Shown piece after piece: positions 11,383 to 62,420 of a DNA stretch of 64,000 nt (position 1 is the stretch's first letter; every line of letters starts with the position of its first letter). The notes under the pieces were generated by a model. It searched no databases and was not told where the DNA came from. It saw only the letters and a program-made list of their open reading frames with translations. Location: positions 23,312,001-23,376,000 of the forward strand of contig CM068747.1 in NCBI GenBank assembly GCA_035084275.1. Direction: 5' to 3'. The position numbers were made by a program, and so were the translations under genes. The stretch is from Hydrolagus colliei (taxonomy: Eukaryota).

Positions 11383-11714
11383 GTACAAAACTAGACAGTG
11401 ATCTTATAAAACCTGAATCCTTCTTCAGTGTGCCAGTCTGTTTCCAACATTACAATGGAAAGTTGATCCCCGTTTATCTTGCTCCTCTCTCAAACTCTGC
11501 CCAGAATCTGCTTCTGGTGAAATTAATCACCACGCTAGTTATTCACAGTAACGTTGGAGTTTCAAGTTTTACGTCTTTGTGTGTTTTTTTTCCCCTGTTG
11601 TTTTAAATAGTGGCTGTCTTGTATGTGGAACTGTTTGATTTGTTCAGTATTAGCATTATTTGGTGGAGCAGAACTTGTATTATTTTCAGAGCCAGTCCAG
11701 ATCCCTGTTGTCGT

Positions 11715-12262
11715 TTTGACCCTCAACTGTCCTTTCTGCCCCACCACCATGAACCTTTCCGCCTCCCCCCACCTCCACCACTGCCTCTCTCCTCGGGGCC
11801 CCCGAGTCCCTCCATTACATCTAGGCTTAACTTCGCTAACTACCTGCTTATTGGCATTCCCAGCTCTTTCTTCTGCATGCTGCAGATCATCCAGAACACT
11901 GCAGCTCGGGTCCTCTCCCACACCAGGCTCCCAAGACCCTATCACCCCCAAGCTCGCCCAGCTCCAATGGCTCCCCATCTCCCAGAGGATAGAGATAAAA
12001 ATCCTTGTCCTCACCTTCAAAGCCTTCCACGGGCTTGCTCCTCCCTACTTTTGTGACTTTTTAACTCCATATCAATCTGTCTGCTCCCTCAGCTCAGCAA
12101 GCTCCAATCTGCTCCACATCCACCACCCAGCCCTCCCCACCAATGACAGTTGGGCCTTCAGCCTCTTTCACCCCATCCTTTGGAACTCCATCCCAATTTC
12201 CTTATTGTCCAGTACCTTGGAGCATCCTCCCGACATTAAAGGTGCTATACAAATGTAGCAAC
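11715..12262 (+). mobile_element. L2-clade LINE 3' fragment
   Basis: LQIIQNTAARVL...LQWLPISQRIEIKILVLTFKAFHGLAPPYF, frameshifted ORF2 C-terminus plus tail. Confidence 0.85.
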
Positions 12263-12506
12263 AACATTTAATTATCAAAATTAGAGATCTTGTTTCAAAT
12301 CTACATATAATATATTATAACTCTATAAAAATATAACTGCAAAGCTAAAATAATAATCCTTCCATTTGTTGTTGATTCACTTTGTCTTGTTTTAACTAGT
12401 TTTGTCTGTCATGTCCATATTTCCTTGAGTTACTACTTCTCTGTGTGAAAAGATCTGGATATTTTCCTGAGTGAATCACTCCCTAAAACAATAATATTCT
12501 TTAAAG

Positions 12507-19811: not shown

Positions 19812-19983
19812 GTACAACTACACACTCGGATTGATCTAAATCTCGTATTGTGCCATCTTTGCCAAGTTTCTACATTCATAGTCTTTGCATTAATCATAGC
19901 CAGAAATGATCTTCTGGTGCTTCTTTCATTCTTGCCATTCATATCACTATCTTTCCCTGTGTTTGTTTGTTGTCATGTGCAGC

Positions 19984-20652
19984 TCTGCCTTCCCTCACCT
20001 CCGCAACGTTGCCCGACTCCGCCACAATCTCACCCCTCAGGCCGCTGAAACCCTCATTCATGCCTTCATCACAACCGGGCTTGACTACGCCAATGCCCTG
20101 CTTGTCGGCCTTCCCAATTCCTCCCTCCATAAGCTGCAACTCATCCAGAACTCAGCGGCCCGTGTCCTCTATCGCTCCAAGCTTGGTGACCCCATCTCCC
20201 CCATTCTCGCCTGACTCCGTCGGCTCCCCATCACCCAGAGGATTCCATTCAAGATCCTGCTGTTCACCTTCAAAGCCCTCCATGGCCTCACCCCACCCTA
20301 CCTTTGTAACCTTCTAACCCCTTAATAACCTGCCCGCTTCCTCTGCTCAGCAGCCTCCGGCCTGCTCCATGTCCCCCGACCCACCCGCCCCACCATCTAC
20401 CGGCGAGGCTTCAGCCACTCTGCCCCCAACCTATGGAATTCCAGAGTCGCTCCACTTCACCTCTTCCTAGCCTCCTTCAAGTCCAGCCTCAAGACCCTCC
20501 TTTTCGACGGTGCCATCGGTCACCTAAATCCTCTCCTTTCGTTCCACCTTCCCCGATCCTGACCCCAGCTCGCGTTTGAAACATTGATTGTCCAGTGCTT
20601 TGGGACGTCCTCCCAATGTGAAAGGCGCTATACAAATGTAATTTTGTTGTTG
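19984..20652 (+). mobile_element. L2-clade LINE 3' fragment
   Basis: AETLIHAFITTGLDYANALLVGLP..LQLIQNSAARVL; (GTT)n tail. Confidence 0.9.
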
Positions 20653-31471: not shown

Positions 31472-31902
31472 GTACAGTCTATCAAACGCAACTTGAAGCT
31501 TTGTTTAATAAATGCAAAACATCCAAATGTGAGGTGTTGGTTTCCTGATTGTCAATATTTGGGCCAGTCGAATATGAAATGCTGCATAATTTTAAACTTT
31601 AGTCCACAGGTATATAAATGTTGTGTATTAGTAATGTATCAAACTGTCCTTCCAGTCCGTTGAAGAATCCGTTGCAATTTATGTAAATTACGTCTTGTGA
31701 TTCTTCCTGTTTATATGTCTTTAGGAGTATTTGGTTGTCTATCAAAACGTTCCTCAGTCTGTTTCAACCTAGGGAACCTAAATGTAGTCCACAAAGTACG
31801 ATACTGTTTGATTTTATGTTGTTCTGCTGTTAAACGTTTCTTTTATGGAATTGATGTTGTCCTTGTTAATCAATCACTAAATGTAATATAAAACCTTTGT
31901 AG

Positions 31903-34392
31903 CTACAGAAAAAACAGAGGCACCTTTGAAATTAAAACCAGCAGCCAAAGTTCCCAAGGAAGTAGTGGAAGACTCGTTAGAAATCCCAAATCTGAAGAAA
32001 ACTAGTAAGATTTCTAAGGAAGACGAAGGTGAACAACGCATTATACGCAAGAAGTTTGATGCATCACCTAAAGAAGAGGAAAAACAATTAGAATTAAAAC
32101 GTAGGATACATGTTAAAAGCCCCAAGGAAACGGAACCTGACCGGGATGTTTTAGCATTAAAGAAAGATGGAATAATTGCAAAGGAGGAAGAAGAACATAG
32201 ACAGTCAGTACTAAAAATAGTTAGCGATGTCCCTAAAATAGAAGATAAGGAAAAGAGAACAACACTCAAAAAACCAGAGAAGATCACCACCGAAAGAGAG
32301 ATCGTAGACAAACCATTGATGAAGAGGTTTGGTAGAGTTCCTAAAGAAGAAAAGGAACCAGAAAGTGTAGTACTTAAAACACCGAGTAGGGTCCCCAAAC
32401 AAGAGAGTGTGCCAGATAAGGGATTAGAGAAGAAACCCAAAGAAGACATCATGAAAGAAAAAGAGTTAGCAGCAAAGACACCTAGTAGAGTCCCCAAGGG
32501 CATAGAAGACCGAGGAAAGCAATTAGTACTCGAAAGGGATGATGAAGTTCCTGTAGAAAAAGGACAAGAGACAGTGACAGAACCTGAAAAAGTTCCCGTG
32601 GAGGTAGGTGAAAGGGAAAAGCCATCAGTGAAATGGGCTGAAGTTCCTATGCCAGAGAAAGCAAAACAAACTGTCATTCCAACGAAGAAGCCGAGCAAAA
32701 GCCCCAAGGAGCAAGAGAAAGAAGAAAAACATTTGATACAGAAAAAAGTTCATACAATTCCCAAAGCCGAGGAGGAGAAAATGGAACATCCGAGTCTCAA
32801 GAGAGTTGACTTTCCCAAAGTTGTTCAAGATGAACCCAGGATTAAACCATTGGTTGAAGAAGAGAAACCTAAAGGGATAGACATTCATCCAATGGAAAGG
32901 ATGCCAAGGGAGACCATTTTAGAAAAGCCTGCAGATAAACCTCTTCCAGGACAAGTTACCCCTGAAGAGGCTGATGTTCCTCCTAAACGAGTACCTGAGA
33001 AGAAAGTGGTGGCTCCCAAAGAGACGCCTCCCGAGTCTCGTTTAAAAATTGGTAAAGGGAAAGTGCCAAGATTGGAAGAGGACAAGGAAAATGTCGAGTT
33101 AAAACCGATTCCCTCAAAAAGAAAGCCGTCGGAAGAAAAAGAGCCCCAGAAACCTCCTAAAGTACCCGAAAAGCAAATAACTATACCAAGGGAATTCATT
33201 ACGTCAAAGGAAAAACCTAATGCCTCAAGCTCTCCCATAGGTAAGGGCAAAGTGCCAGTCTCAGAAGAACAGAAAGAACCCGTGCAACTTGAAAAAGTCC
33301 CTACACCAGAAACTATATTAGAGGAAAAGGAACCACAGAAAATAGCGGACAAGGTGCCAATATCCGACGAGACGCCTGGTGAGAAGCAGCTTCTCATTGG
33401 CAAAGGCAAAGTGCCAGTTTCAGAAATAGGGAAAGTTGCCGCAGAGCTCAAGAAAGTGCCCTCAAAAGAGGTTGTGTCAGATGAAAAAGAACCAAGGAAA
33501 GTACCTGGAAGGAAAGGCATATCCCCTAAGGCATCCCCAAAAGAGAAACCAGATTTTGTGGACACTACAATTAGCAAAGGAAAAGTGCCCATATCAGAAA
33601 TACCAAAGGAAGCTGTTGAGGTGAAGAAAGTTCCCTCAAAGGAAGTTGTGGCAGAGGAAAAAGAACCAAAGAAAATACTGGGGAGAAAAGTGATTTCCCC
33701 CAAAGAGAAACCAGATGATGTAGATATTAGAATTAGCAAAGGGAAAGTGCCCCTATCAGAAACACCCACAGAAAATGTAGAGGTGAAGAAAGTTCCCTCA
33801 AAGGAAATCATGGCAGATGGAAAAGAACCAAAGAAAATACCTGGAAGGAAAGTCATATCCCCTAAAGTATCCCCTATAGAGAGACCAGATGCCGTGGACA
33901 GTAAAATTAGCAAAGGGAAAGTGCCCGTTTCAGAAATACTAAAGGAAACTGTAGAGATGAGGAAAGTTCCCTCAAAGGAAATAGTGGCTGATGAAAAAGA
34001 ACCAAAGAAAATACCTGGAAGAAAAGTTATTTCCCCTAAAGAGAAACCCGAGGCTGTAGATCGTAAAATTAGGAAAGAGAAAGTGCCCGTTTCAAGCAAA
34101 GAAAGCGAAACAGTAGACCTGGACAAGACCCCTTCGGAAGACATTTCACAGGGAGAATCTGAAGAAATGCATGAAGCAGCTGGTGAAGAAGCTAATGAAG
34201 GCAGGTATGAAGAGCCAGAAGAAGAGACTGAGGAGATATCATCCGAAGAATTACCATACACAGAGGATTGGGAATGGGAAGGAACCGAAGGAGAGGAAGA
34301 ATATGGGTCATCTGTGGATTGGGAATATGAAGATGATGAAGAATTAGTTGAGGGTGTAGTTCAGACTCCTGGACAGTCTTCCAAGCGACGAG
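31903..34392 (+). CDS. ttn: titin giant PEVK-like exon (2490 nt, 830 aa) with KGKVP repeats and an acidic tail
   Basis: ctttgtag| acceptor (alternative CAG at 31908), CGAG|gtgaga donor, phase 1-1, no stops, P/E/V/K-rich. Confidence 0.88.
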
Positions 34393-34989
34393 GTGAGATG
34401 GCTGCAGATCTACACTCATCATATGCTTGGAAAACTAGTCAGTGTTCCTCAGTGTTGTGTATGTGTGTCTGTCTGTGTCAAATGTCTTTCTCTTGGCAGT
34501 TTGTCTGCTGGTGTGTGCATGAAGCACTAGGGACGTCAACCGTGATACAAAATTAATGTCCATTATTTGTGCTTTGTCTGTGTGGTTTTATCTTTTCTGT
34601 CTGAAAAGATCATTTGTTTTTTATTTGCTATTAACAGAACTATGGGTGAATTATTCAGTAATTTTCACATCCCTTTCATGGTTAGGGAATTCTGTGAAAA
34701 TTAAAAAAAAATGTCTGGTATCACATTTTTCTCATCTTTAAGCTAACAGATATTCATTTTAATTTCTTCTAGCATATCGAGTAAGCATTTAATTAATACA
34801 TTAAGATGGTCCCAGTATTCTTTTTAAAATATTTTTTGTATCTACATAAATATTTTTGCTTTATTGAAGAACATTTTACTCGTCTCAATTTTCAGTCGTG
34901 AGTTACTAGTCGTTTAACAGTTCACTTTTCATGCGGTAATACAGTAATCCCTTCTAAAAAAACAATGAAACAGTAATAATGATAATTTG

Positions 34990-43244: not shown

Positions 43245-43312
43245 GCAAGTGGCAGCAGTGCTTCCATTGCGCTGTATAAAATAATGGAATATTTGTAGCA
43301 CAAGAGATTGTT

Positions 43313-44008
43313 CGGCCCATTGCGTCTCAGGTATGCTTTGCTTCCTCCCCCAAACTGTCCTTCCTCCCCCACATCTGGTCCCTCACCAGCACCGCCTTCT
43401 TCCACCTCCGACGGATCGCCCGTCTCCGGCAGTACCTCAACCCAAAAGCCGCTTAAACCCTGGTCCACACTTTCGTCATCTCACAGCTGGACTATTCAAA
43501 TGCCCTCCTCGCCGGTCTCCCCTCCACCAGAATCCATAAAATCCAACTCAACCAAAACTCTGCCGCCCATGTACTCACCCGCACCAAGCTTCGCTCCCCC
43601 GTTACCGCAGTCCTTGCCAGATTTCACTGGCTCCCTATCCCCGAGAGGATCAACTTCAAGATCCTGACCCTTGTTTTCAAATGCCCCCACTCCTCTGCAC
43701 CCTCCTACCTCTCTGACCTCCTCTCTCCTCAAACCAGCTCCCGTTGCCTTCGCTCCACTGGGTCTGGCCTCCTCCATGTCCACGAATCCTTCGCTCCACC
43801 CTCGGCGACCGGGGCTTCATCCACTATGCCCCGACGCTCTGGAATTCCCCTCCTCACTACCTTCATCTTGCCCCCTCTTTTCTCATTTTCAGGTCCCAGC
43901 TGAAGACCTTTCTCTTCGACTGCGCCTTCAGCTCCGAGATCCGCTATTGTGAAGTGCCCTCCACACCGTCTGGTGTGGAGGGCACTATATAAATCGAAGT
44001 TGTTGTTG
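43313..44008 (+). mobile_element. L2-clade LINE 3' fragment
   Basis: Homologous to the 19984 copy; (GTT)n tail. Confidence 0.88.
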
Positions 44009-45441: not shown

Positions 45442-46159
45442 GTAGATCATTTTTCATTACATGTTTAATCAATAGCATTTTTATACAATAAGCCTGTTAA
45501 ACACAAATGCATGATTTGGATCATCAGTTCTTGATAAATGATATGAGATCACACAGTCTGTCTGATACCTATGCGGTCGGAAATGCATCACCATGCTTAA
45601 GAGCATTAAACTAGACTGAGAATTCCACATATGCAAGCAACCTCCCCGTGGAAATTTCCCTGTGACAATTTACCGTATTCTTTATAACCACATAAGGCAA
45701 TTTATTGTAATCTTTCAATTCGGACAACTAATTTACCTTTTACCACTCTCTGGAACTCCATCCCACAGTCCCTCCAACCCGTTCCCTCCCCTTGCTCTGT
45801 ATCCAATTCAAGACCTTCCCTATCCTTGCTCTCACTCATCTTTAATCCTCCCACTAATTTGCTTCCACCCCTAGCTCAAGTGACAATCTAGTTTTGCTAA
45901 GCGCCTTAGGACGCTCTCTTGAAGTGAAAGACGCTTCAATAAATATAAACTCACACTGTATTGTATTTACTTATTCCACTCACCATCCTCTTGAGTTCCT
46001 GAAGTAAAAGTAGGTTTTGTATTTAGCTAAATTGCCTATGAAATGACTAACAGATAATTACCCAATAAGGAAACACAGTGTTGGAACACATCAAGTTGCT
46101 TTTTTTTTGCTGAGTTTGTAATTTGGAGGCAAAATAATATTCAAGTCTGCATTTTTGCC

Positions 46160-46489
46160 AGAAGATTGATTGACGGCAGCGGGCGGTTGTCAAAGAGGAA
46201 TTTGCTGTGTGACCAATGGCCTTGGTGGCTATTTTGAAAAGGACATACCGGTACCTTATGTAGTAACATGGGAGCAGATGTGATTGGCAGCTCAAGCAGA
46301 TGCCACTCAGATTTACTGCTGACAGTGTTAGAAGTCAGGAGGACAATATGCAAATGTAGCTGGAATGTCTCTCCCTTTCCTTCTACTGGGCCTGGGAGTG
46401 AGGGACACAGAGGTTGGTCTCTTGGGTCGGAGCTGAGATGAGGTTCAGGTGAAAATGAACAAGCCTCTCGGGGGACTGCAGAATTAATC
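46160..46489 (+). promoter_or_regulatory. candidate internal (Cronos-type) titin promoter / 5'UTR
   Basis: Repeat-free, GC-richer block: TGATTGACGG (46167), GC box (46181), CCAAT (46213), MEF2-like CTATTTTGAA (46229), CAGATG E-boxes (46275, 46297), reverse CCAAT (46283), TGGAATGT MCAT (46361). It precedes an in-frame ATG at 46490 and lies in the intron homologous to the one before mammalian exon 240. Confidence 0.6.
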
Positions 46490-46511
46490 ATGTTCTCTCC
46501 CACATCCAAAG
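46490..46511 (+). CDS. ttn: candidate alternative N-terminus MFSPTSK- of an internally initiated (Cronos) titin
   Basis: aatcATG (A at -3), in frame with the 46512 exon; upstream in-frame stop at 46439. Confidence 0.55.
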
Positions 46512-46654
46512 CACGAGTCATTGGCTTACTGAAGCCCCTGAAGGATGTGACTGTAGTAGCTGGGCATTCTGCTACCTTTGAGTGTGAGCTCTCGTATGAG
46601 GGTATCCCTGTTGAGTGGTTTTTGAAGGACACTAAGTTGGAAGCCAGTGACAAG
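46512..46654 (+). CDS. ttn: titin Ig I96, 5' half (exon-240 orthologue by exon count)
   Basis: ARVIGLLKPLKDVTVVAGHSATFECELSYE; 143 nt. Confidence 0.95.
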
Positions 46655-46889
46655 GTAAGTCCATGTTATTTCATTTGTTTGTATGTGTGTTTTGTTTCAA
46701 AGCCAATTGTGTCAACATGCATGATCCTAGGGGAATTGTTTTATGCAAGACCACTTCAATTGTTTAAACATTGATCATTTAACATTTTATTAAATAAAAT
46801 GGTATACCAACATTGATGTTGGTAACTTGTAAGGGCTTTTTCTTTCTTTAACTACATATACTATAAGCACCGTGTTTAGTTATCCAGTC

Positions 46890-47455
46890 TACATTCCAAA
46901 AGTTTCTTCTGTTCTGATTCTGAGTCTATCTCTAAGTATTCTGCATATAAGGGGCTCTGGTGGTTTCCAATTCCATTTCAGGCAATTGACAGGCAGTGGC
47001 TTCAAGATAAGATAACATTGGGGGCATAAGTTTGGGTTTCCAAGCGTTCAATCTGGGCTATTTTTAAATGTTACAAGTGCCTGCGTGCGCGGTTTGACGT
47101 GGGCAAATTGCTGAGTCTTTTATTGCGGGCGATTTATTGCAAGACCTGCATTTTCAGAACCCCAGTTTTCCAAAAGAAAAAACAAACATGCACACATACA
47201 CAATCATATATACATTGCATATAAACCTACATAGTAGAACTATAAGATTGATTGTGTTCTGCAACAAAATACATTTAAAAAATTTACTTTTTTCACTCTC
47301 TGTGTTTGAAATCTGTGCTGAAGATCTAATGCCCCAAAAGAAATCCTCTCCTTGAAATGTACTGTGAAGCCAATTGCAGCACAGAATACTATATTTCTAG
47401 TTTTTTTTAAAGAGTGCATTTCCGCGCACTTTCATCTTATTCTATATTTAATGTC
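46890..47455. promoter_or_regulatory. candidate muscle enhancer in intron
   Basis: MCAT ACATTCCA (46891), CArG-like GCATATAAGG (46943), tandem AGATAA (47005-47015), consensus MEF2 CTATTTTTAA (47058) and CTATATTTAA (47442). Confidence 0.4.
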
Positions 47456-48759
47456 TTTAATCTCTAGCCAACAATTCCTTTATCCGCTGTTCAGTTCAGT
47501 TTTGTTGAAAACAAAGATTTGACCATTAAAACCCTTAAACCAATAAATTGTAGAAATTTAATGTACTGAATTAAGTGCAGCAATCTGAAAAGTAATGGGC
47601 TGATCAGTTTAGCAGAAAAATAATACCGCCATCTCCCACAAAGTGCAACACAACGAGAATATCTATGTGTTCACTTAGGAGTCCAGAGCTGTATTATAGT
47701 TTTTGTAGCATCCTTGTAGTGGTTGCCTTACATTCAGCAGGTATTTGCAAATGAGTCACCACGGAGGGAAATGTACATGAAAACTGCTTAATGCTTACTG
47801 AAGTGTATCTGGGAAATCAAACCTCAGAGACATATCAGTTAAACCAACTCGATCATCAAACAACTAAGCTGAAATGTTAGTTCATTCCCTGGCAAGTAGC
47901 TAACAAGTGTAACATGTCGATTTAAATTCAAGCTGTTTCCACTCTAGTTTCCTACAATCTGTTTAAAAATATTGCCCCAATTGTTTGAATAATATTTTCC
48001 CTGATAGGATTTCTGTATACAGCATTACACTAGTCCACTGCTGGAAATTATTTGTTAAATAAATCCAAGTACAGTAAAATCTTTAAAACGCCAGACACTA
48101 AAAACTTTCTTTAGTGCACTGTTATGGATTTACTTAATACTTAGATACGTGTCAACAAAAAGCATCAAAAAGCCTCACATAACCTTCACGTTCAATAGTA
48201 CTTTCAGAGAAAACCCAATCTAGGTACAGATTTGTGAGAAATATAGATGCTGTAGTAATGTTTATTGTACTTCCATGTCATCTTTGTAGCAGCTGATAGA
48301 AACAGTTGTTTCCACTTGCTGTTTGGTTCCACATATAGCTTTGACTGGCTAACTACGAAATCATATTTTTGTACCACACCTGTTGGAAAGGAACGAAAAT
48401 ACATGTTCTACAAATTTTCAGTGTAGCTACAACATTCTGAACTAACTTTAAACAACGTGTGTGTCGTAGTTTATTGAAATCTTATTGCAAATTTTAAAAA
48501 TGTGCAGAATTGTAATGTCCTAACTTTTTGTTTAATCTCATTTCAATTTAAGTGATGGTCGATCTTGCAAACATAACAATGCTTTCAAAAAGCTGCACAC
48601 AATCCTATTTATGATATTAATAATACTGTAATAATAACATTTTGTTGATATGGGTAATTTCTCTTGAAATTTCATCTATTTGGTAATTCGGTAGATACTT
48701 TAAAAATGCTCAGAACAGATATTTAACGAGTTTAACATTTCAAACAATTTTTGGTTCAG

Positions 48760-48883
48760 GTTGTTACTCGTGCTGAAGGAAGAGTGCACACTTTCACCCT
48801 CAGAGATGTTCAGTTAATTGAAGCAGGAAAAGTCAAAATTACCGCCAAGGACTTTTCTACATCTGCTAAACTTATTGTGAAAG
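48760..48883 (+). CDS. ttn: titin Ig I96, 3' half
   Basis: VVTRAEGRVHTFTLRDVQL; 124 nt. Confidence 0.95.
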
Positions 48884-48995
48884 GTGAGTGACAGACGTCC
48901 GACAATTCTTTGAAGCTTTGTTCTATTTGTTTGCCCCATGTGCACTGGGGTTGCAGGTTTTTATGTTTACTTATGGAATAGTTAGTAGTACTGTA

Positions 48996-49206
48996 TTCCA
49001 GGGCACTGCTGATGACAGCACAGCCAGCCTTGCCTGACTCATCAGCAGGACTTGGAAGAATAGACCAGTAACTGGGGCCGAGGGATCATCCCGCTCAGCT
49101 CCTGTTAACCCTGCAAGCCAAAGTGCTAGCGGGTAGTGTGGTTCAGACAACAATATCAAAGGCGAACTTTGCGGTTTTGGCAGGTCAGACTCCAGCTACT
49201 ACCCCG
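48996..49206 (+). other. intronic multi-hairpin element (candidate structured RNA)
   Basis: Consecutive inverted repeats paired by eye: 48996-49057, 49069-49107, 49108-49134, 49157-49171. Confidence 0.45.
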
Positions 49207-49277
49207 ACACACACTCTGGGGTGCCCAAGCTGTGGCTATGTTTGCTTGTGTTGAATTTTCATATCAATCTGTTACAG

Positions 49278-49544: not shown

Positions 49545-49731
49545 GTAAGTAGAGAAAGATTCATATCTAAAGCTATCGATGTACATCAATGTTCATATCC
49601 TCTGTGCGCAACACGATAACGTAGCTACCATGCACCTACAAACAAGGCCTCGCTTCTTTTTCAGCGCCTTAGGAAGTCCTCCTGATATGTAAAGCCCTCT
49701 ACAAATGTAATGTTGTTGTTGTTGTTTACAG

Positions 49732-53858: not shown

Positions 53859-54158
53859 ATGTGCCCGGCCCAATCCAGAACTTGAACATTGTAGAAACTT
53901 ACGATGGTGAAGTGAGTCTTGCCTGGGATGAGCCTGATAGTGATGGTGGCAGCAAGATCCTTGGGTACGTCGTAGAAAGACGTGATGTAAAACGCAAGAC
54001 TTGGACCTTGGCTACTGATCGTGCCGACAGCACTGAGTTCACAGTGACTGGGCTCCAGAAAGTCTTAGAGTACCTGTTCCGTGTGAGCGCAAGGAACAGA
54101 GTAGGCACAGGTGAACCTGTGGAAACTGATGTGCCTGTTCAAGCTAAGAATAGGTTTG
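53859..54158 (+). CDS. ttn: titin FN3 I106
   Basis: DVPGPIQNL...DGEVSLAWDEP; 300 nt. Confidence 0.95.
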
Positions 54159-54221: not shown

Positions 54222-55452
54222 TAGGGAACGGCGATATATCGGTATATCGCTAAAGCCCGATATGAGTTTCATATCGATATGCCGATATAGACATTTAAAA
54301 AATACCGATATATCGAAAAACGATATATCGAGGTAAAAAATCGGGATGCGAGCAAAATCAACTACAAGACCCAGAATGCTCATCTCTATACACAATGCAC
54401 AGACCGAGGTGCAAAGCCGCCATCTTGTATTCATAGTCCTCGAATACAATATACAGGTATGCAAGGGGTGGGGGGAGAGAGACGGCTGTGGGTGGGGGGG
54501 GTGAGGGGGAGAGAGACGGCTGGGGGGGGGGTGAGGGGGAGACAGACGGCTGGGGGGAGGGGGAGACAGACGGCTGGGAGGGGAGAGGGGGAGAGAGACG
54601 GCTGGGGGGGGAGGAGTGGGGGAGAGAGACGGCTGGGGGGAGGGGTAGAGACGGCTTGGGGGGGAGGGAGAGAGAGACAGCGGGGGGGGGGGAGGAGAGG
54701 GGGAGAGAGACGGCTGGGGGGAGGGGGAGAGAGACGGCTGGGGGGGGAGGGAGAGAGAGACGGCGGGGGGGCGAGGAGAGGGTGAGAGAGACGGCTGGGG
54801 GGGGAGGGAGAGAGAGACGGTGGGGGGGGGGAGGAGGAGAGGGGGAGAGAGACGGCTGTGGGGAGGGGGAGAGAGACGGCTGGGGGGTGAGGGAGAGAGA
54901 GACGGCGGGGGGGGCGAGGAGAGGGTGAGAGAGACGGCTGGGGGGGGAGGGAGAGAGAGACGGTGGGGGGGGGGGAGGAGGAGAGGGGGAGAGAGACGGC
55001 TGGGGGGAGGGGGAGAGAGACGGCTGGTGGGGGGAGGGAGAGAGAGGCGGTGGGGGGCAGGGAGGGAGAAAGAGACGGCTGGGGGGGGGGTTGGGGAGAG
55101 AGACAACGGGGGTGGGGGGTGCGAGAGAGGGACGGCGGGGGGGTGGGGGGGAGAGACGGGGTGGATGTGATAATATACAGATAGATAGAGATGGGTGGGG
55201 ATGTGAGAGAGGAGAGAGGGACAGAGACATAGAGAGACACAGACAGAAAAACACAGAGATGGAGAGAGTGAGAGACACAGAGAGAGAAAGATATTTACCT
55301 CCTGAGAAGATAGGCCCCGAATGCGCGCGCACCCGGAATGCGCGCGCGCATGCGCAGTACGAAAAAACGGAAAATATCGGTATTTCGGTATATCTCGATA
55401 TGAGCCAACCGATATATCCATATCCGGAAAATTCCCATATCGCCGTTCCCTA
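54222..55452. mobile_element. non-autonomous hAT element containing a G-rich minisatellite
   Basis: Perfect 16-bp TIR TAGGGAACGGCGATAT/ATATCGCCGTTCCCTA; 8-bp TSD ACTTCTAC/ACGTCTAC (1 mismatch); subterminal CCGATAT/ATATCG repeats. Confidence 0.9.
54465..55165 (+). repeat. G-rich minisatellite, unit ~GGGGGAGAGAGACGGCTGGGGGG
   Basis: Many copies of GAGAGACGG(CT) separated by G runs. Confidence 0.95.
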
Positions 55453-57147: not shown

Positions 57148-57284
57148 GTAAGTCCAATCGCTCTAAATAAAAAAGAAATCTTGAGAAATATAAGATCTAA
57201 AAATCTTTCATAGGGAAAATGCTTTAGTGGAATACTTTCAGTTCTAATTGGAAGAACACAGACAAGGAATAGCCGATGAAGCTA

Positions 57285-57775
57285 AATCAATCAATCGATC
57301 AATCAAAACTTACATTTATATAGCACTTTTCACGTCGGGAGGACGTCCCAAGGGTCTGTACAGTCAGGTAGGGACCAGAGCAGGGTGGGAGGAGACTGGG
57401 CAGGGGGAAGGAAAGTAGGAAAAATGGACTGTATATTTATTGGCGAAACACGGCAGCCAAATTGCGCACAGCAGTGTCCCACAAACACTCGCAGAAGTGG
57501 GGTTAGGGGAGAAAGGGGGAAAAAGGGGTAAGGGGGAGAGGGAGGGAAAGATGGGGTGGGGTAAAGTCAGAGAGGAAAAAGGGCAAGAAAGGGGGGTAAG
57601 GGGAGAGGGAGGGAAAGGTGGGGTAGTTAACATCAGGGAGAAATGGGGGAGAAAGGGTGTAAAGGGGGAAGAGGGACGGAAGGAGGGAAAAGGGGGAGGG
57701 GGGAAAAATGGGGGAAAAGGGAGCAGAGGGAATGAAGAGAGAGGAGAGGGGCAGGGAAGAAAAAGGGGAAGAAAT
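57285..57775 (-). mobile_element. composite SINE (Deu core + pyrimidine tract + L2-type tail)
   Basis: (TCAA)n tail, atagcacttttcacgtcgggaggacgtcccaagg, Deu core reversed; homologous to the 59947 copy. Confidence 0.7.
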
Positions 57776-58279
57776 ATATATAGAACCAATAGTACAAATC
57801 TGCTAGAGTTATTTAAAGAAATAACTAAATTGGTGGACATGTTTTTCAGTGGATTTGTTAGATGGCATTCGCTAAAGTTCCACATGAGATTTTTAAGCAA
57901 GGTTTAAAACAGCAATCATGGTGATGGGAGTTGATTGAATAGTGTGGAATTTTAACTTAATTAATTAAAAGATCAAGTGATAATCCCTGTTGATGTTTCC
58001 GCAGCGGATAGAATAGGTGGGTTGCGTTTAACAGTGTATACGCTTTGCATGATCTGGGGGGAAAAAAAACAGGCTTCATTAATAGAAGAGGGTGTGAGCA
58101 GGTTGCAATGAACTATCTACTACATATTGTAGTATGAAAACTATTTTTATAAATCACTATACTTTTATTGGTGAAGCTTTATATTTTTGCTATATTATTG
58201 CACTTGTAGAAGATTCGATGACGTGCACGTTGTTTTCTTTCCTTATCAAAATTGTCTTGCTTGATTTGTGCCTCTCTAG

Positions 58280-59946: not shown

Positions 59947-60340
59947 CAATCAATCAATCAATCAATACACATTCATATAGCGCCTTTTACATTGAGAGGA
60001 CGTCCCAAGGTGCTGTACAGTTAGGTATGGACAAAACCAGGGAGCGAGGGGTCAGGGCAGGATGAAGAAGAGTAGGAAAATTGACTGTATATTTGTGGGC
60101 GAAACACAGCTGCCAAATTGCGCCCAGCAATGTCCCTCAAACAGCCACGGAAATGGAGCCAGAGGAGAAAGGGGGGAAAGAGGGCAAGGGGGGAGAGGAA
60201 GGGAAAGGTGGGGTGAGGTAAGGTCAGGGAGGAAGAGGGGGGAGAAAGGGGTATGAGGGAGAAAGGGAGGGAAAGGTGGGTGGGGGGCAAGATCAGGGAG
60301 AAAGGGGGGGAAGAGGGAGGGAAGGGGAAAAGGGAGCAAG
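59947..60340 (-). mobile_element. composite SINE (Deu core + pyrimidine tract + L2-type tail)
   Basis: Homologous to the 57285 copy. Confidence 0.7.
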
Positions 60341-60399
60341 ACCTCTATGTAACACGTTATTCAAAAGACTAAATAACATGTGTTCTTTGCTTACAACAG

Positions 60400-61672: not shown

Positions 61673-61723
61673 GTATGGGTGATTGTTTTGTCAAATATCA
61701 TATATGAATTTAAGAAAATTTCT

Positions 61724-62420
61724 CTCTCGTCCTCTCTGCTCCACCATCGGTGGCTGTGCCTTCAGCCATAGCGTCTCAAAACTCGGGAACTCTCGCGCTC
61801 AATCCTACCACTGTGCCCCCTTCCTCCCCACTTTCAAATCCCAGTTAATCCCTTTTACCCATATCCCTTCCTTTTTGATTGTGCTAGTCCTCACATGTAA
61901 AGCCCTCCACAACCTTGCCCCACCCTACATCCGTGACCTCCTATCCCCTTACCAACCTGCCCGTCCCCTCCACTCAACAGACTCTGGCCTGCTTCATGTC
62001 CCCTGACCCACCCACCCAACCATTCCTGGGCGAGCCTTCAGTCATTCTGCTCCCAACCTCTGGAACTCCATCCCAAAGTTCCTCTGCCTCGCACCCTCCC
62101 TGGCCTCCTTCAAGTCTCGCCTCAAGACTCTCCTCTTCGATGGTCTCATTGGCAACTCCTCCTCCCCACCCCCTCCCCCCCACCACCCCCCACCACTAGC
62201 TCGAGTCAGAAGCAGTAACCTGTCCAGTGCCTTGGGACATCCTCCTGACGTGAAAGGTACTGTACAAATGTAATTTTGTTGTTGTTGTTGTTGTTGCTTA
62301 CTTTCATCTCCACTCTCCCTCTCCCCCTGGCTCGGAGTCAAACTTAGCCACTATTAAGCGCTCTGGGTCACTGACCCACGCATAGGGCGCTATATGAATG
62401 CAAATTGTGTTGTTGTTGTT
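61724..62420 (+). mobile_element. nested L2-clade LINE 3' fragments
   Basis: VLTCKALHNLAPPYIRDLLSPYQPARPLHSTDSGLLHVP; two (GTT)n tails. Confidence 0.85.

What the first reader, a model, noticed from the sequence alone, without database searches (positions are those of the whole stretch)
46160..46654. Candidate Cronos-type internal promoter and alternative start (MFSPTSK-ARVIGLL) in a cartilaginous-fish titin
Seen: the acceptor of the 143-nt I96 exon is an atypical AAG, whereas the other Ig/FN3 exons here use CAG/TAG. The 22 nt before it begin with an ATG (46490, A at -3) in frame with titin. Upstream is a transposon-free block with PBX/MEIS-like TGATTGACGG, GC box, two CCAAT boxes, a MEF2-like site, three E-boxes and an MCAT element. 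Known: the short C-terminal Cronos isoform starts from a promoter upstream of exon 240 in human, mouse and zebrafish (Zou et al. 2015). Counting back from the first I/A-junction exon (251) makes this exon number 240. Inference: the internal promoter predates the shark/bony-fish split. I do not know of a chondrichthyan report.
Basis: partly seen in the sequence, partly recalled or inferred. Interest (0 to 1): 0.8.

Follow-up and report, generated by a model that had tools for sequence, protein, structure and literature searches.

The report
Ancient internal start of short titin
In this cartilaginous-fish titin gene, the end of one intron carries a start codon and an upstream control block that match the known internal start of the short "Cronos" titin, which suggests this second start is as old as jawed vertebrates, though no RNA data could be checked.

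Summary
ATG 46490 lies in frame, 7 codons plus a split codon before a 143-nt half-Ig exon (46512-46654). That exon is the only one of 44 with an AAG acceptor.

The ATG alone is at chance level: 14 of 44 exons have an in-frame upstream ATG. Its conservation is not. Of 79 related ORFs from unnamed vertebrate contigs, 57 have a Met exactly 7 residues before the exon. Two control exons show no such conserved start.

The geometry matches Zou 2015: Met 7 aa upstream in zebrafish, 12 aa in mouse and human. Two ORFs, P0259 and P0261, show the 12-aa form.

One distant vertebrate contig, L001, is syntenic. It shares TGATTGAC, CCAAT, TATTTT and an 11-nt inverted CCAAT upstream, in the same order and spacing. 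This chain occurs 0 times in 40 Mb of random sequence. The GC box and MCAT are absent from L001, and the E-boxes do not line up.

No RNA run exists for this organism, so promoter activity is inferred, not shown. The nearest named relative is Callorhinchus milii.

Verdict: a new member of a known kind, the Cronos start and promoter in a chimaera-like fish.

The parts
46167..46176 (+). PBX/MEIS-like TGATTGACGG
   Evidence: TGATTGAC recurs in L001 at 2076, which is -368 from its ATG against -323 here.
46181..46186 (+). GC box GGGCGG (not conserved)
   Evidence: Absent from the 400 nt upstream of the ATG in L001.
46213..46226 (+). Distal CCAAT box followed by CCTTGGT
   Evidence: L001 has CCAAT at 2133 and CCTTGGT at 2144.
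46229..46238 (+). AT-rich box CTATTTTGAA. It is MEF2-like but not canonical and could be a TATA-like box.
   Evidence: TATTTT is conserved in L001 at 2151. Its role is inferred.
46280..46290 (+). GTGATTGGCAG, an inverted CCAAT box. It is the longest exact match to L001.
   Evidence: 11 of 11 bases identical to L001 2191-2201. L002 has ATTGG 81 nt before its ATG.
46346..46356 (+). ATATGCAAATG: octamer-like site plus an E-box
   Evidence: L001 has ATATGTTAATG at 2265 in collinear position.
46362..46367 (+). MCAT-like GGAATG (not conserved)
   Evidence: Absent from the L001 upstream region.
46438..46452 (+). Mini upstream ORF: ATG AGG TTC AGG TGA
   Evidence: L001 has ATG AGG ATT AGC ATT TGA at 2362. 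This may be chance.
46455..46487 (+). Upstream ORF of 10 codons ending at a TAA 2 nt before the main ATG. The TAA is also branch-point-like.
   Evidence: TAA sits at -5..-3 in the window, L001 (CTAAC) and L002.
46490..46511 (+). In-frame ATG plus a 22-nt intronic extension (MFSPTSK + G of the split codon). It doubles as the polypyrimidine tract and AAG acceptor.
   Evidence: Met at -7 in 57 of 79 relatives. L001 and L002 DNA.
46512..46654 (+). 143-nt first half of the 13th distal Ig domain, taken as the orthologue of the Cronos first exon
   Evidence: Relatives are 75-96% identical, against 32-43% identity for the long multi-Ig proteins in the same search (paralogues). Synteny.
46655..46660 (+). 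Donor GTAAGT
48760..48883 (+). 124-nt second half of the same Ig domain (CAG acceptor, GTGAGT donor)
   Evidence: Joined to the first half in P0001 and P0007.

Best explanation
This is the cartilaginous-fish counterpart of the Cronos internal start of titin.

**Proposed mechanism (inferred).** Transcription would begin inside the intron, upstream of the 143-nt exon. By geometry I place the start near 46255-46280. That is about 27-45 nt downstream of the TATTTTGA box and next to the conserved GTGATTGGCAG. It is also about 235-257 nt before the exon, as in mouse and human. The RNA would run unspliced through the last 22 nt of the intron into the exon. [quoted passage not shown]

**Dual use of the same bases.** In full-length titin mRNA, the same 30 nt serve as branch point, polypyrimidine tract and AAG acceptor.

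**Shown:**
- the sequence features themselves
- their conservation
- synteny of the compared contigs
- agreement with the published geometry

**Inferred:**
- the transcription start
- promoter activity
- use of the ATG in this species
For: 1. **Conserved start codon.** Of 79 related ORFs, 57 have Met exactly 7 residues before the exon, and 53 of those have no other upstream Met. There are 18 different heptapeptides, with MSSPQSK in 32. In alignment A1 of 17 diverse sequences, M1 and S3 are invariant.

2. **Controls.**
   - Previous half-Ig exon: 85 hits with starts scattered from -2 to -58 or inside the exon. The commonest position accounts for 8 of 85, and there is no shared upstream peptide.
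   - Exon 49732, which has a chance Met at -7 in the window: only 1 hit, C. milii, with Met at -12.

3. **Published geometry.** From passages read in Zou 2015 (PMC4720518): zebrafish Met is 7 aa upstream and the TSS is 110 bp upstream of the exon. In mouse and human the Met is 12 aa upstream and the TSS is 257/256 bp upstream. P0259 and P0261 have Met exactly 12 residues upstream of the same exon. Teleost-like ORFs have it at -5 to -10 or further.

4. **Orthology.**
   - L001 carries orthologues of window exons 45067 and 45315 upstream of the candidate exon.
   - L002 carries the partner exon and the next Ig exon downstream.

5. **Conserved upstream block, window against L001.**
   - Local alignment score 21. 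Dinucleotide shuffles give 12.8 +/- 2.1, and 3 of 500 reach it. Other real intron windows reach at most 14 (n=46) and 16 (n=40).
   - The chain TGATTGAC-CCAAT-TATTTT-ATTGG, with the window's spacing +/-25 nt, occurs once in the window and once in L001, at the matching place. It occurs nowhere else in the window, L001, L002 or L003 on either strand, and 0 times in 40 Mb of Markov-1 sequence.

6. **Start context.** A at -3 of the ATG in the window, L001 and L002.

7. **Conserved AAG acceptor.** The last intronic residue is K, Q or E in 62 of 77 hits. Two of the K cases (P0002, P0007) are spliced models whose K comes from the previous exon, which leaves 60. With the same boundary this implies NAA+G. 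L001 shows CCAAAG directly.
Against: - No RNA run holds this stretch. The only run, X1, is DNA with flat depth. There is therefore no transcript 5' end, coverage step or chromatin mark.
- The ORF database only holds ORFs that have a start codon, so species without the ATG are under-sampled. 2 of the 79 hits start inside the exon.
- Upstream DNA could be compared in one other species only (L001). The simple exact-word chain tests are weak:
  - k>=8: 54 of 1000 resamples reach the observed value, and 0 of 118 real controls
  - k>=7: 149 of 1000 resamples, and 3 of 118 real controls
- The GC box and MCAT are absent from L001, and the E-boxes do not line up.
- With a start near 46260, the leader would hold 8 upstream ATGs.
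- The C. milii model P0001 starts at this Met, but it is no specific support. P0109 and P0330 have the same 'intronic ATG + two half-exons + read-through' form at other Ig domains.
- The species of L001, L002 and nearly all ORFs are unknown. The depth of conservation therefore rests on sequence divergence and on one named frog and one named chimaera.
Confidence: 0.7

Rival explanations
1. The conserved upstream block is an intronic enhancer or splicing regulator of full-length titin. The ATG is conserved in sequence, but no transcript starts here in this fish. Cronos expression would then be a bony-vertebrate use of an older element.
For: - No RNA evidence exists.
- The block is not a CpG island.
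- A start near 46260 would give a leader with many upstream ATGs.
- PBX/MEIS and CCAAT sites also occur in enhancers (my own knowledge, not from a call).
Against: An enhancer would not need an in-frame ATG kept at a fixed distance from the exon. Yet 57 of 79 relatives have it at -7, and the controls do not. The same ATG geometry is the experimentally mapped start in zebrafish.
Confidence: 0.15
2. Everything follows from splice-signal constraint plus chance. The last 30 nt of the intron are conserved as branch point, pyrimidine tract and acceptor. The ATG and the upstream motifs are coincidental.
For: - In-frame upstream ATGs are common here: 14 of 44 exons.
- The heptapeptide is coded by a pyrimidine tract (TCT TCT CCC ...).
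- TAA at -5..-3 looks like a branch point.
- The k-mer chain tests are weak.
Against: - The control exons have the same splice constraints but no conserved Met or upstream peptide.
- ATG is not part of any splice signal.
- The four-motif chain recurs at the matching place in L001 and 0 times in 40 Mb of random sequence.
- The local alignment score exceeds all 86 real control windows.
Confidence: 0.08
3. The open frame upstream reflects an alternative 3' splice site. CAG at 46479-46481, 30 nt upstream, would insert ELIMFSPTSK in frame into full-length titin.
For: A CAG lies 30 nt upstream, and the phase-1 junction would stay in frame (direct reading).
Against: - The pyrimidine tract and branch-point-like TAA lie downstream of that CAG, on the wrong side for its use.
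- L001 has no AG at the matching place.
- The spliced models P0002 and P0007 use the AAG site.
Confidence: 0.02

Closest known systems
Cronos titin internal promoter and start (zebrafish ttna e115-e116 intron; mouse e223; human e239-e240 intron; Zou et al. 2015, PMC4720518)
   Same: - Position at the 3' end of an intron in the distal Ig segment
- An in-frame Met read unspliced into the exon: 7 aa upstream here, as in zebrafish
- Relatives of the same exon show the 12-aa form reported for mouse and human
   Different: - No 5'RACE, RNA-seq, H3K4me3, DNase or protein evidence in this species.
- The exon-number equivalence was not verified directly.
- The cis-motif architecture described here is not in the passages of Zou 2015 that I read. 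Its supplements were not open to me.
Novex-3 titin (N-terminal short isoform)
   Same: A truncated titin isoform made from the same gene. Zou 2015 names it as the N-terminal counterpart of Cronos.
   Different: Novex-3 arises by an alternative terminal exon with a stop, not by an internal promoter. [quoted passage not shown]
Telokin / kinase-related protein from an intronic promoter of MYLK (recalled, no call)
   Same: A C-terminal product of a large muscle gene, made from a promoter inside an intron, sharing frame and exons with the long product.
   Different: It is an unrelated gene of a different size class, and I did not test it here.
Elephant shark connectin gene description (PMC12241362, Sci Rep 2025)
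   Same: Same gene in the closest named relative. It reports N2BA and N2A isoforms and gives 22 distal Ig domains for human.
   Different: The word Cronos does not occur in it. The two 'promoter' matches in the text I searched are both in the reference list, in the twice-printed title of Zou 2015.

Membership tests
Cronos internal start of titin | Lies in the intron just upstream of the exon orthologous to human e240, mouse e223 and zebrafish e116 | tested here: inconclusive
   - The exon is the first half of the 13th of 22 distal Ig domains by my count.
- Relatives of this exon show Met at -7 and, in P0259 and P0261, at -12, as published.
- Synteny with L001 and L002.
- No named zebrafish, mouse or human sequence was compared, so the exon number itself is unverified.
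Cronos internal start of titin | In-frame initiator Met in the 3' end of the intron, contiguous with the exon | tested here: met
   ATG 46490 lies 7 codons plus a split codon before the exon. It is the first in-frame ATG after the TGA at 46439 and has A at -3. It is conserved in 57 of 79 relatives.
Cronos internal start of titin | Transcription start inside the intron (5'RACE: 110 bp upstream in zebrafish, 256-257 bp in human and mouse) | not testable with these tools
   No RNA run holds the stretch. The only run is DNA.
Cronos internal start of titin | Promoter chromatin (H3K4me3, DNase hypersensitivity) over the exon | not testable with these tools
   No such data were available to me.
Cronos internal start of titin | A short (about 2.3 MDa) C-terminal titin protein | not testable with these tools
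   The size comes from PMC9648829. There are no protein data for this species.
Cronos internal start of titin | Conserved promoter-proximal sequence upstream of the Met | tested here: met
   - Collinear TGATTGAC, CCAAT, CCTTGGT, TATTTT, GTGATTGGCAG and ATATG..AATG in the window and L001.
- The four-motif chain occurs 0 times in 40 Mb of random sequence.
- Only one other species was available, and the k-mer tests are weak.

The most novel reading that the evidence does not exclude
The Cronos core promoter is a non-coding module more than 400 million years old, with a fixed order: PBX/MEIS site, CCAAT, AT-rich TATA-like box, then an inverted CCAAT at the transcription start. It would have been kept from the common ancestor of jawed vertebrates.

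The odd AAG acceptor would be kept with it, because the same bases serve as branch point, start context, N-terminal codons and splice acceptor at once.

If so, a two-titin sarcomere (full-length titin plus an A-band-only titin) is an ancestral vertebrate design. It would echo the split titin-like genes of invertebrates that Zou 2015 points to.
Probability: 0.45. Interest if true: 0.65.

Novelty: new member of a known kind. Interest (0 to 1): 0.5.

Why it matters
Cronos is tied to the position-dependent severity of titin truncations in cardiomyopathy (Zou 2015). What drives its promoter is not described in the open papers I could search. Only 2 papers hold 'Cronos promoter' together with 'transcription factor'. 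In the passages I read, neither describes cis-elements of the promoter.

A chimaera copy with the same start codon pushes the origin of the short isoform back to the jawed-vertebrate ancestor. The small set of motifs shared with a distant vertebrate gives a short, testable list of candidate control sites: TGATTGAC, two CCAAT boxes and an AT-rich box.

No paper holds Cronos, titin and shark together. The 2025 elephant-shark connectin paper does not mention Cronos.

Tried and rejected
**RNA evidence.** The look-up of sequencing runs listed one run only, X1, which is not RNA. Laying it showed flat DNA-like depth and confirmed the letters, with one difference at 48785. It gave no transcript information.

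**Genomic DNA of the related ORFs.** I could therefore not fetch the contigs behind P0003, P0012 and the others. Upstream DNA came only from the metagenome scan (L001, and L002 with just 92 nt upstream). L003 is an unrelated GC-rich partial match and was ignored. The genome-contig scan found nothing.

**Species names.** The listing of cluster members gave no names. The lineages of the ORF groups are therefore not known to me. My early guess that the MSSPYQ group was mammalian was dropped once P0259 and P0261 showed the 12-aa geometry.

**Long Cronos-length models.** The search of protein representatives returned no giant protein starting at this Met. Its top rows are multi-Ig proteins ranked on scores summed over several matched stretches.

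**P0001 as transcript evidence.** Rejected. P0109 and P0330 have the same form at other Ig domains.

**Statistics.** The exact-word chain tests were weak. BLAST found only the 11-mer in the promoter block, at E=7.2.

**Literature.**
- PMC6911360 (Zaunbrecher 2019) is not held.
- Zou 2015's main text gives no Cronos N-terminal sequence.
- Its supplements, including the primer table and figure supplements that may show the exact start sites, were not open to me.

**Spliced model.** Only single exons with their intronic extension were searched, and the joined step was left out.

Full report
**What the window is.** On the + strand the window holds a vertebrate titin gene. PEVK micro-exons run to about 28,900. 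A giant PEVK-like exon lies at 31,887-34,400. Distal Ig exons begin at about 36,400, and the first FN3 exon is near 53,859. The nearest named relative is Callorhinchus milii. Identity is 96% over the candidate exon and 94% over the control exon. The organism is therefore a cartilaginous fish close to, but not identical with, the elephant shark.

**The observation.** One search shows ATG at 46490 with A at -3. It is followed by TTC TCT CCC ACA TCC AAA and the G of a split GCA codon. Then come the AAG acceptor (46509-46511), the 143-nt exon 46512-46654 and a GTAAGT donor.

The frame is closed by TGA at 46439-46441, so this is the first in-frame ATG. Two spliced database models place the normal acceptor exactly there: P0002 (...LRVK|ARVIGL) and P0007.

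The partner half-exon is 48760-48883. The two halves add to 267 nt, one Ig domain. By my count it is the 13th of 22 distal Ig domains. The number 22 is what PMC12241362 gives for human.

Among 44 Ig/FN3 exons whose acceptors I picked by eye from scored candidates, 34 use CAG, 9 TAG and 1 AAG, which is this exon. The listed motifs are all present, with two corrections. There are four CANNTG sites, not three, and the 'MEF2-like' CTATTTTGAA fails the canonical YTAWWWWTAR.

The DNA run X1 covers 45748-49020 in one contig, with a single difference at 48785. Depth is flat at about 44, so the block is single copy and the letters are confirmed. X1 may be the sample that the window was assembled from.

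**Is it beyond chance?** The ATG by itself is not. 14 of 44 exons have an in-frame ATG upstream before any stop, and 10 of 44 have one within 12 codons. Two others have it at exactly -7. That test is post hoc.

**Conservation of the start codon.** I searched the exon with its intronic extension, on its own and without joining exons, against the large protein collection. It returned 79 short ORFs, nearly all called on unspliced genomic contigs of unnamed organisms.
- 57 of 79 have a Met exactly 7 residues before the exon's split codon.
- 53 of those have no other upstream Met.
- The heptapeptides vary: MSSPQSK 32, MSSPESK 7, and 16 other forms that include MFSPTSK in C. milii.
- M1 and S3 are invariant in an alignment of 17 diverse members.

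**Controls.**
- The preceding half-Ig exon has a chance Met at -5 in the window. It gave 85 hits whose starts are scattered from -2 to -58 or lie inside the exon. The commonest position accounts for 8 of 85, and there is no shared upstream peptide.
- Exon 49732 has a chance Met at -7. It gave one hit only, C. milii, with Met at -12 instead.
- Caveat: the collection only holds ORFs that have a start codon, so species lacking the ATG are under-sampled. 2 of the 79 hits begin inside the exon.

**Link to Cronos.** I read passages of Zou et al. 2015 (PMC4720518).
- In zebrafish, 5'RACE placed a start 110 bp upstream of e116, with an initiator Met 7 amino acids upstream.
- In mouse and human the start is 257 and 256 bp upstream of e223 and e240, with a Met 12 amino acids upstream.

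The whole-library search added two ORFs, P0259 and P0261. Both have the same exon sequence type and a Met exactly 12 residues upstream, with none at -7. I do not know their species and did nothing further with them. Teleost-like ORFs (ARSIGL type) carry the Met at -5 to -10 or further. The published geometry is thus reproduced in relatives of this very exon. This is my main ground for equating it with the Cronos first exon. The exon number 240 itself was not verified.

**Synteny and the upstream block.** A metagenome scan gave two vertebrate contigs.
- L001 (MSSPQSK type, 76% identical over the 55 residues) carries orthologues of window exons 45067 and 45315 upstream of the candidate exon.
- L002 (teleost-like) carries the partner exon and the next Ig exon downstream.

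The rest of the intron does not align. Upstream of the ATG, however, the window and L001 share a series of sites in the same order. Positions are relative to each ATG, window first and L001 second:

| Site | Window | L001 |
|---|---|---|
| TGATTGAC | -323 | -368 |
| CCAAT | -277 | -311 |
| CCTTGGT | -270 | -300 |
| TATTTT | -260 | -293 |
| GTGATTGGCAG | -210 | -253 |
| ATATG..AATG | -144 | -179 |

The statistical tests give a mixed picture.
- The local alignment score is 21. Dinucleotide shuffles give 12.8 +/- 2.1, and 3 of 500 reach it. Other real intron windows reach maxima of 14 (46 windows) and 16 (40 windows).
- Chains of exact words are weaker evidence. For k>=8, 54 of 1000 resamples and 0 of 118 real controls reach the observed value. 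For k>=7, 149 of 1000 resamples and 3 of 118 real controls do.
- The chain TGATTGAC-CCAAT-TATTTT-ATTGG, with the window's spacing +/-25 nt, occurs once in the window and once in L001, at the matching place. It occurs nowhere else on either strand of the window, L001, L002 or L003, and 0 times in 40 Mb of Markov-1 sequence.
I chose TATTTT after seeing L001.

L002 has only 92 nt upstream, but it has ATTGG 81 nt before its ATG. The GC box and MCAT are absent from L001, and the E-boxes do not line up.

**How it most likely works.**
- *Shown:* the ATG, its frame, the acceptor, conservation of the Met, synteny, and a conserved upstream motif chain.
- *Inferred:* RNA polymerase II starts inside the intron, and the transcript has no upstream donor. 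The AAG acceptor is therefore not used, and the last 22 nt of the intron become coding. Translation from 46490 would give a C-terminal titin that begins in the 13th distal Ig domain.

If L002 behaves like zebrafish, the zebrafish start (110 bp before the exon) falls about 7 nt upstream of its ATTGG. In the window, 256 bp before the exon is 46256. That is 26 nt after the TATTTT box and 24 nt before GTGATTGGCAG. I therefore guess a start at about 46255-46280. This is inference only.

Such a leader would hold 8 upstream ATGs. They include a 4-codon ORF at 46438, which has a look-alike in L001. They also include a 10-codon ORF that ends at the TAA 2 nt before the main ATG. This speaks for a weakly translated message, or for a start further downstream.

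The TAA at -5..-3 is shared by all three sequences. In L001 it reads CTAAC, a branch-point consensus (that consensus is my own knowledge). The last 30 nt of the intron thus appear to serve as branch point, start context, N-terminal codons, pyrimidine tract and acceptor at once.

The A at acceptor -3 is kept widely. The last intronic residue is K, Q or E in 62 of 77 hits. Two of the K cases (P0002, P0007) are spliced models whose K comes from the previous exon, which leaves 60. Given the same boundary this means NAA+G. Teleost-like sequences have S, A, T or L, meaning CAG or TAG, and L002 shows CCCCAG. I have no tested explanation for why a weak AAG acceptor is kept.

**Rivals.**
- *An enhancer or splicing element without a local start.* This cannot be excluded without RNA, but it does not explain a Met kept at a fixed in-frame distance.
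- *Pure splice-signal constraint plus chance.* The two control exons and the motif chain contradict it.
- *An alternative acceptor at CAG 46479-46481.* It would stay in frame, but it lies upstream of the pyrimidine tract and has no counterpart in L001.
- *The C. milii model P0001.* It starts at MFSPTSK and is spliced to the partner exon, so it looked like transcript evidence. Models P0109 and P0330 have the same shape at other Ig domains, so it proves nothing.

**Novelty.**
- No paper in the searched library holds Cronos, titin and shark together.
- The 2025 elephant-shark connectin paper does not contain the word Cronos and cites Zou 2015 only in its reference list.
- Only 2 papers hold 'Cronos promoter' and 'transcription factor' together. 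In the passages I read, neither dissects cis-elements.

Since Cronos is already known to be shared by zebrafish and mammals, extending it to a cartilaginous fish is a new member of a known kind. The short list of conserved motifs is the more useful by-product. Supplements of Zou 2015 that may show exact start sites and sequences were not open to me.

**Verdict.** Promoter activity in this species remains untested. Confidence is 0.7 and interest is 0.5.

Noticed in passing
window 48906-49267: The stretch just upstream of exon 49278 has word depth 20,000-27,000 in DNA run X1, against about 44 for single copy, with many contig joints and loose ends. It is a high-copy repeat.
   Followed up: partly
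window 45648-45828 (also about 43300-44000, 61700-62270, 11600-12270, 19900-20580): SINE-like repeat with depth of about 115,000 in X1. Its translated frames read ...LWNS.P... in several copies in the window.
   Followed up: no
window 48785: The X1 contig has C where the window has T (GTG to GCG, Val to Ala) in the partner half-Ig exon. This is an allele or an assembly difference.
   Followed up: no
window 46509-46511 and relatives: The A at acceptor position -3 appears to be kept in most non-teleost-like relatives. The last intronic residue is K, Q or E in 62 of 77 hits, two of them spliced models. Teleost-like sequences use CAG or TAG. Why a weak AAG acceptor is kept is unexplained.
   Followed up: partly
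window 49710-49731 and 60379-60399: Two other exons (49732, 60400) also have an in-frame ATG exactly 7 codons upstream. For 49732 the Met is not kept even in C. milii, where it sits at -12 in P0330.
   Followed up: partly
P0001, P0109, P0330 (Callorhinchus milii database entries): Three fragment models share one shape: the first in-frame intronic ATG, two half-Ig exons, then read-through into the next intron. They look like artefacts of fragmentary gene models, not isoforms.
   Followed up: partly
window 54290-55200, 57250-57900, 59996-60370: Purine-rich (G/A) low-complexity tracts inside introns of the I/A-junction region. GC reaches 0.59 and skew is strong.
   Followed up: no
window 46438-46452 and L001 2362-2379: A mini upstream ORF beginning ATGAGG lies 52 nt before the main ATG in the window and 82 nt before it in L001. 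It may be chance.
   Followed up: no
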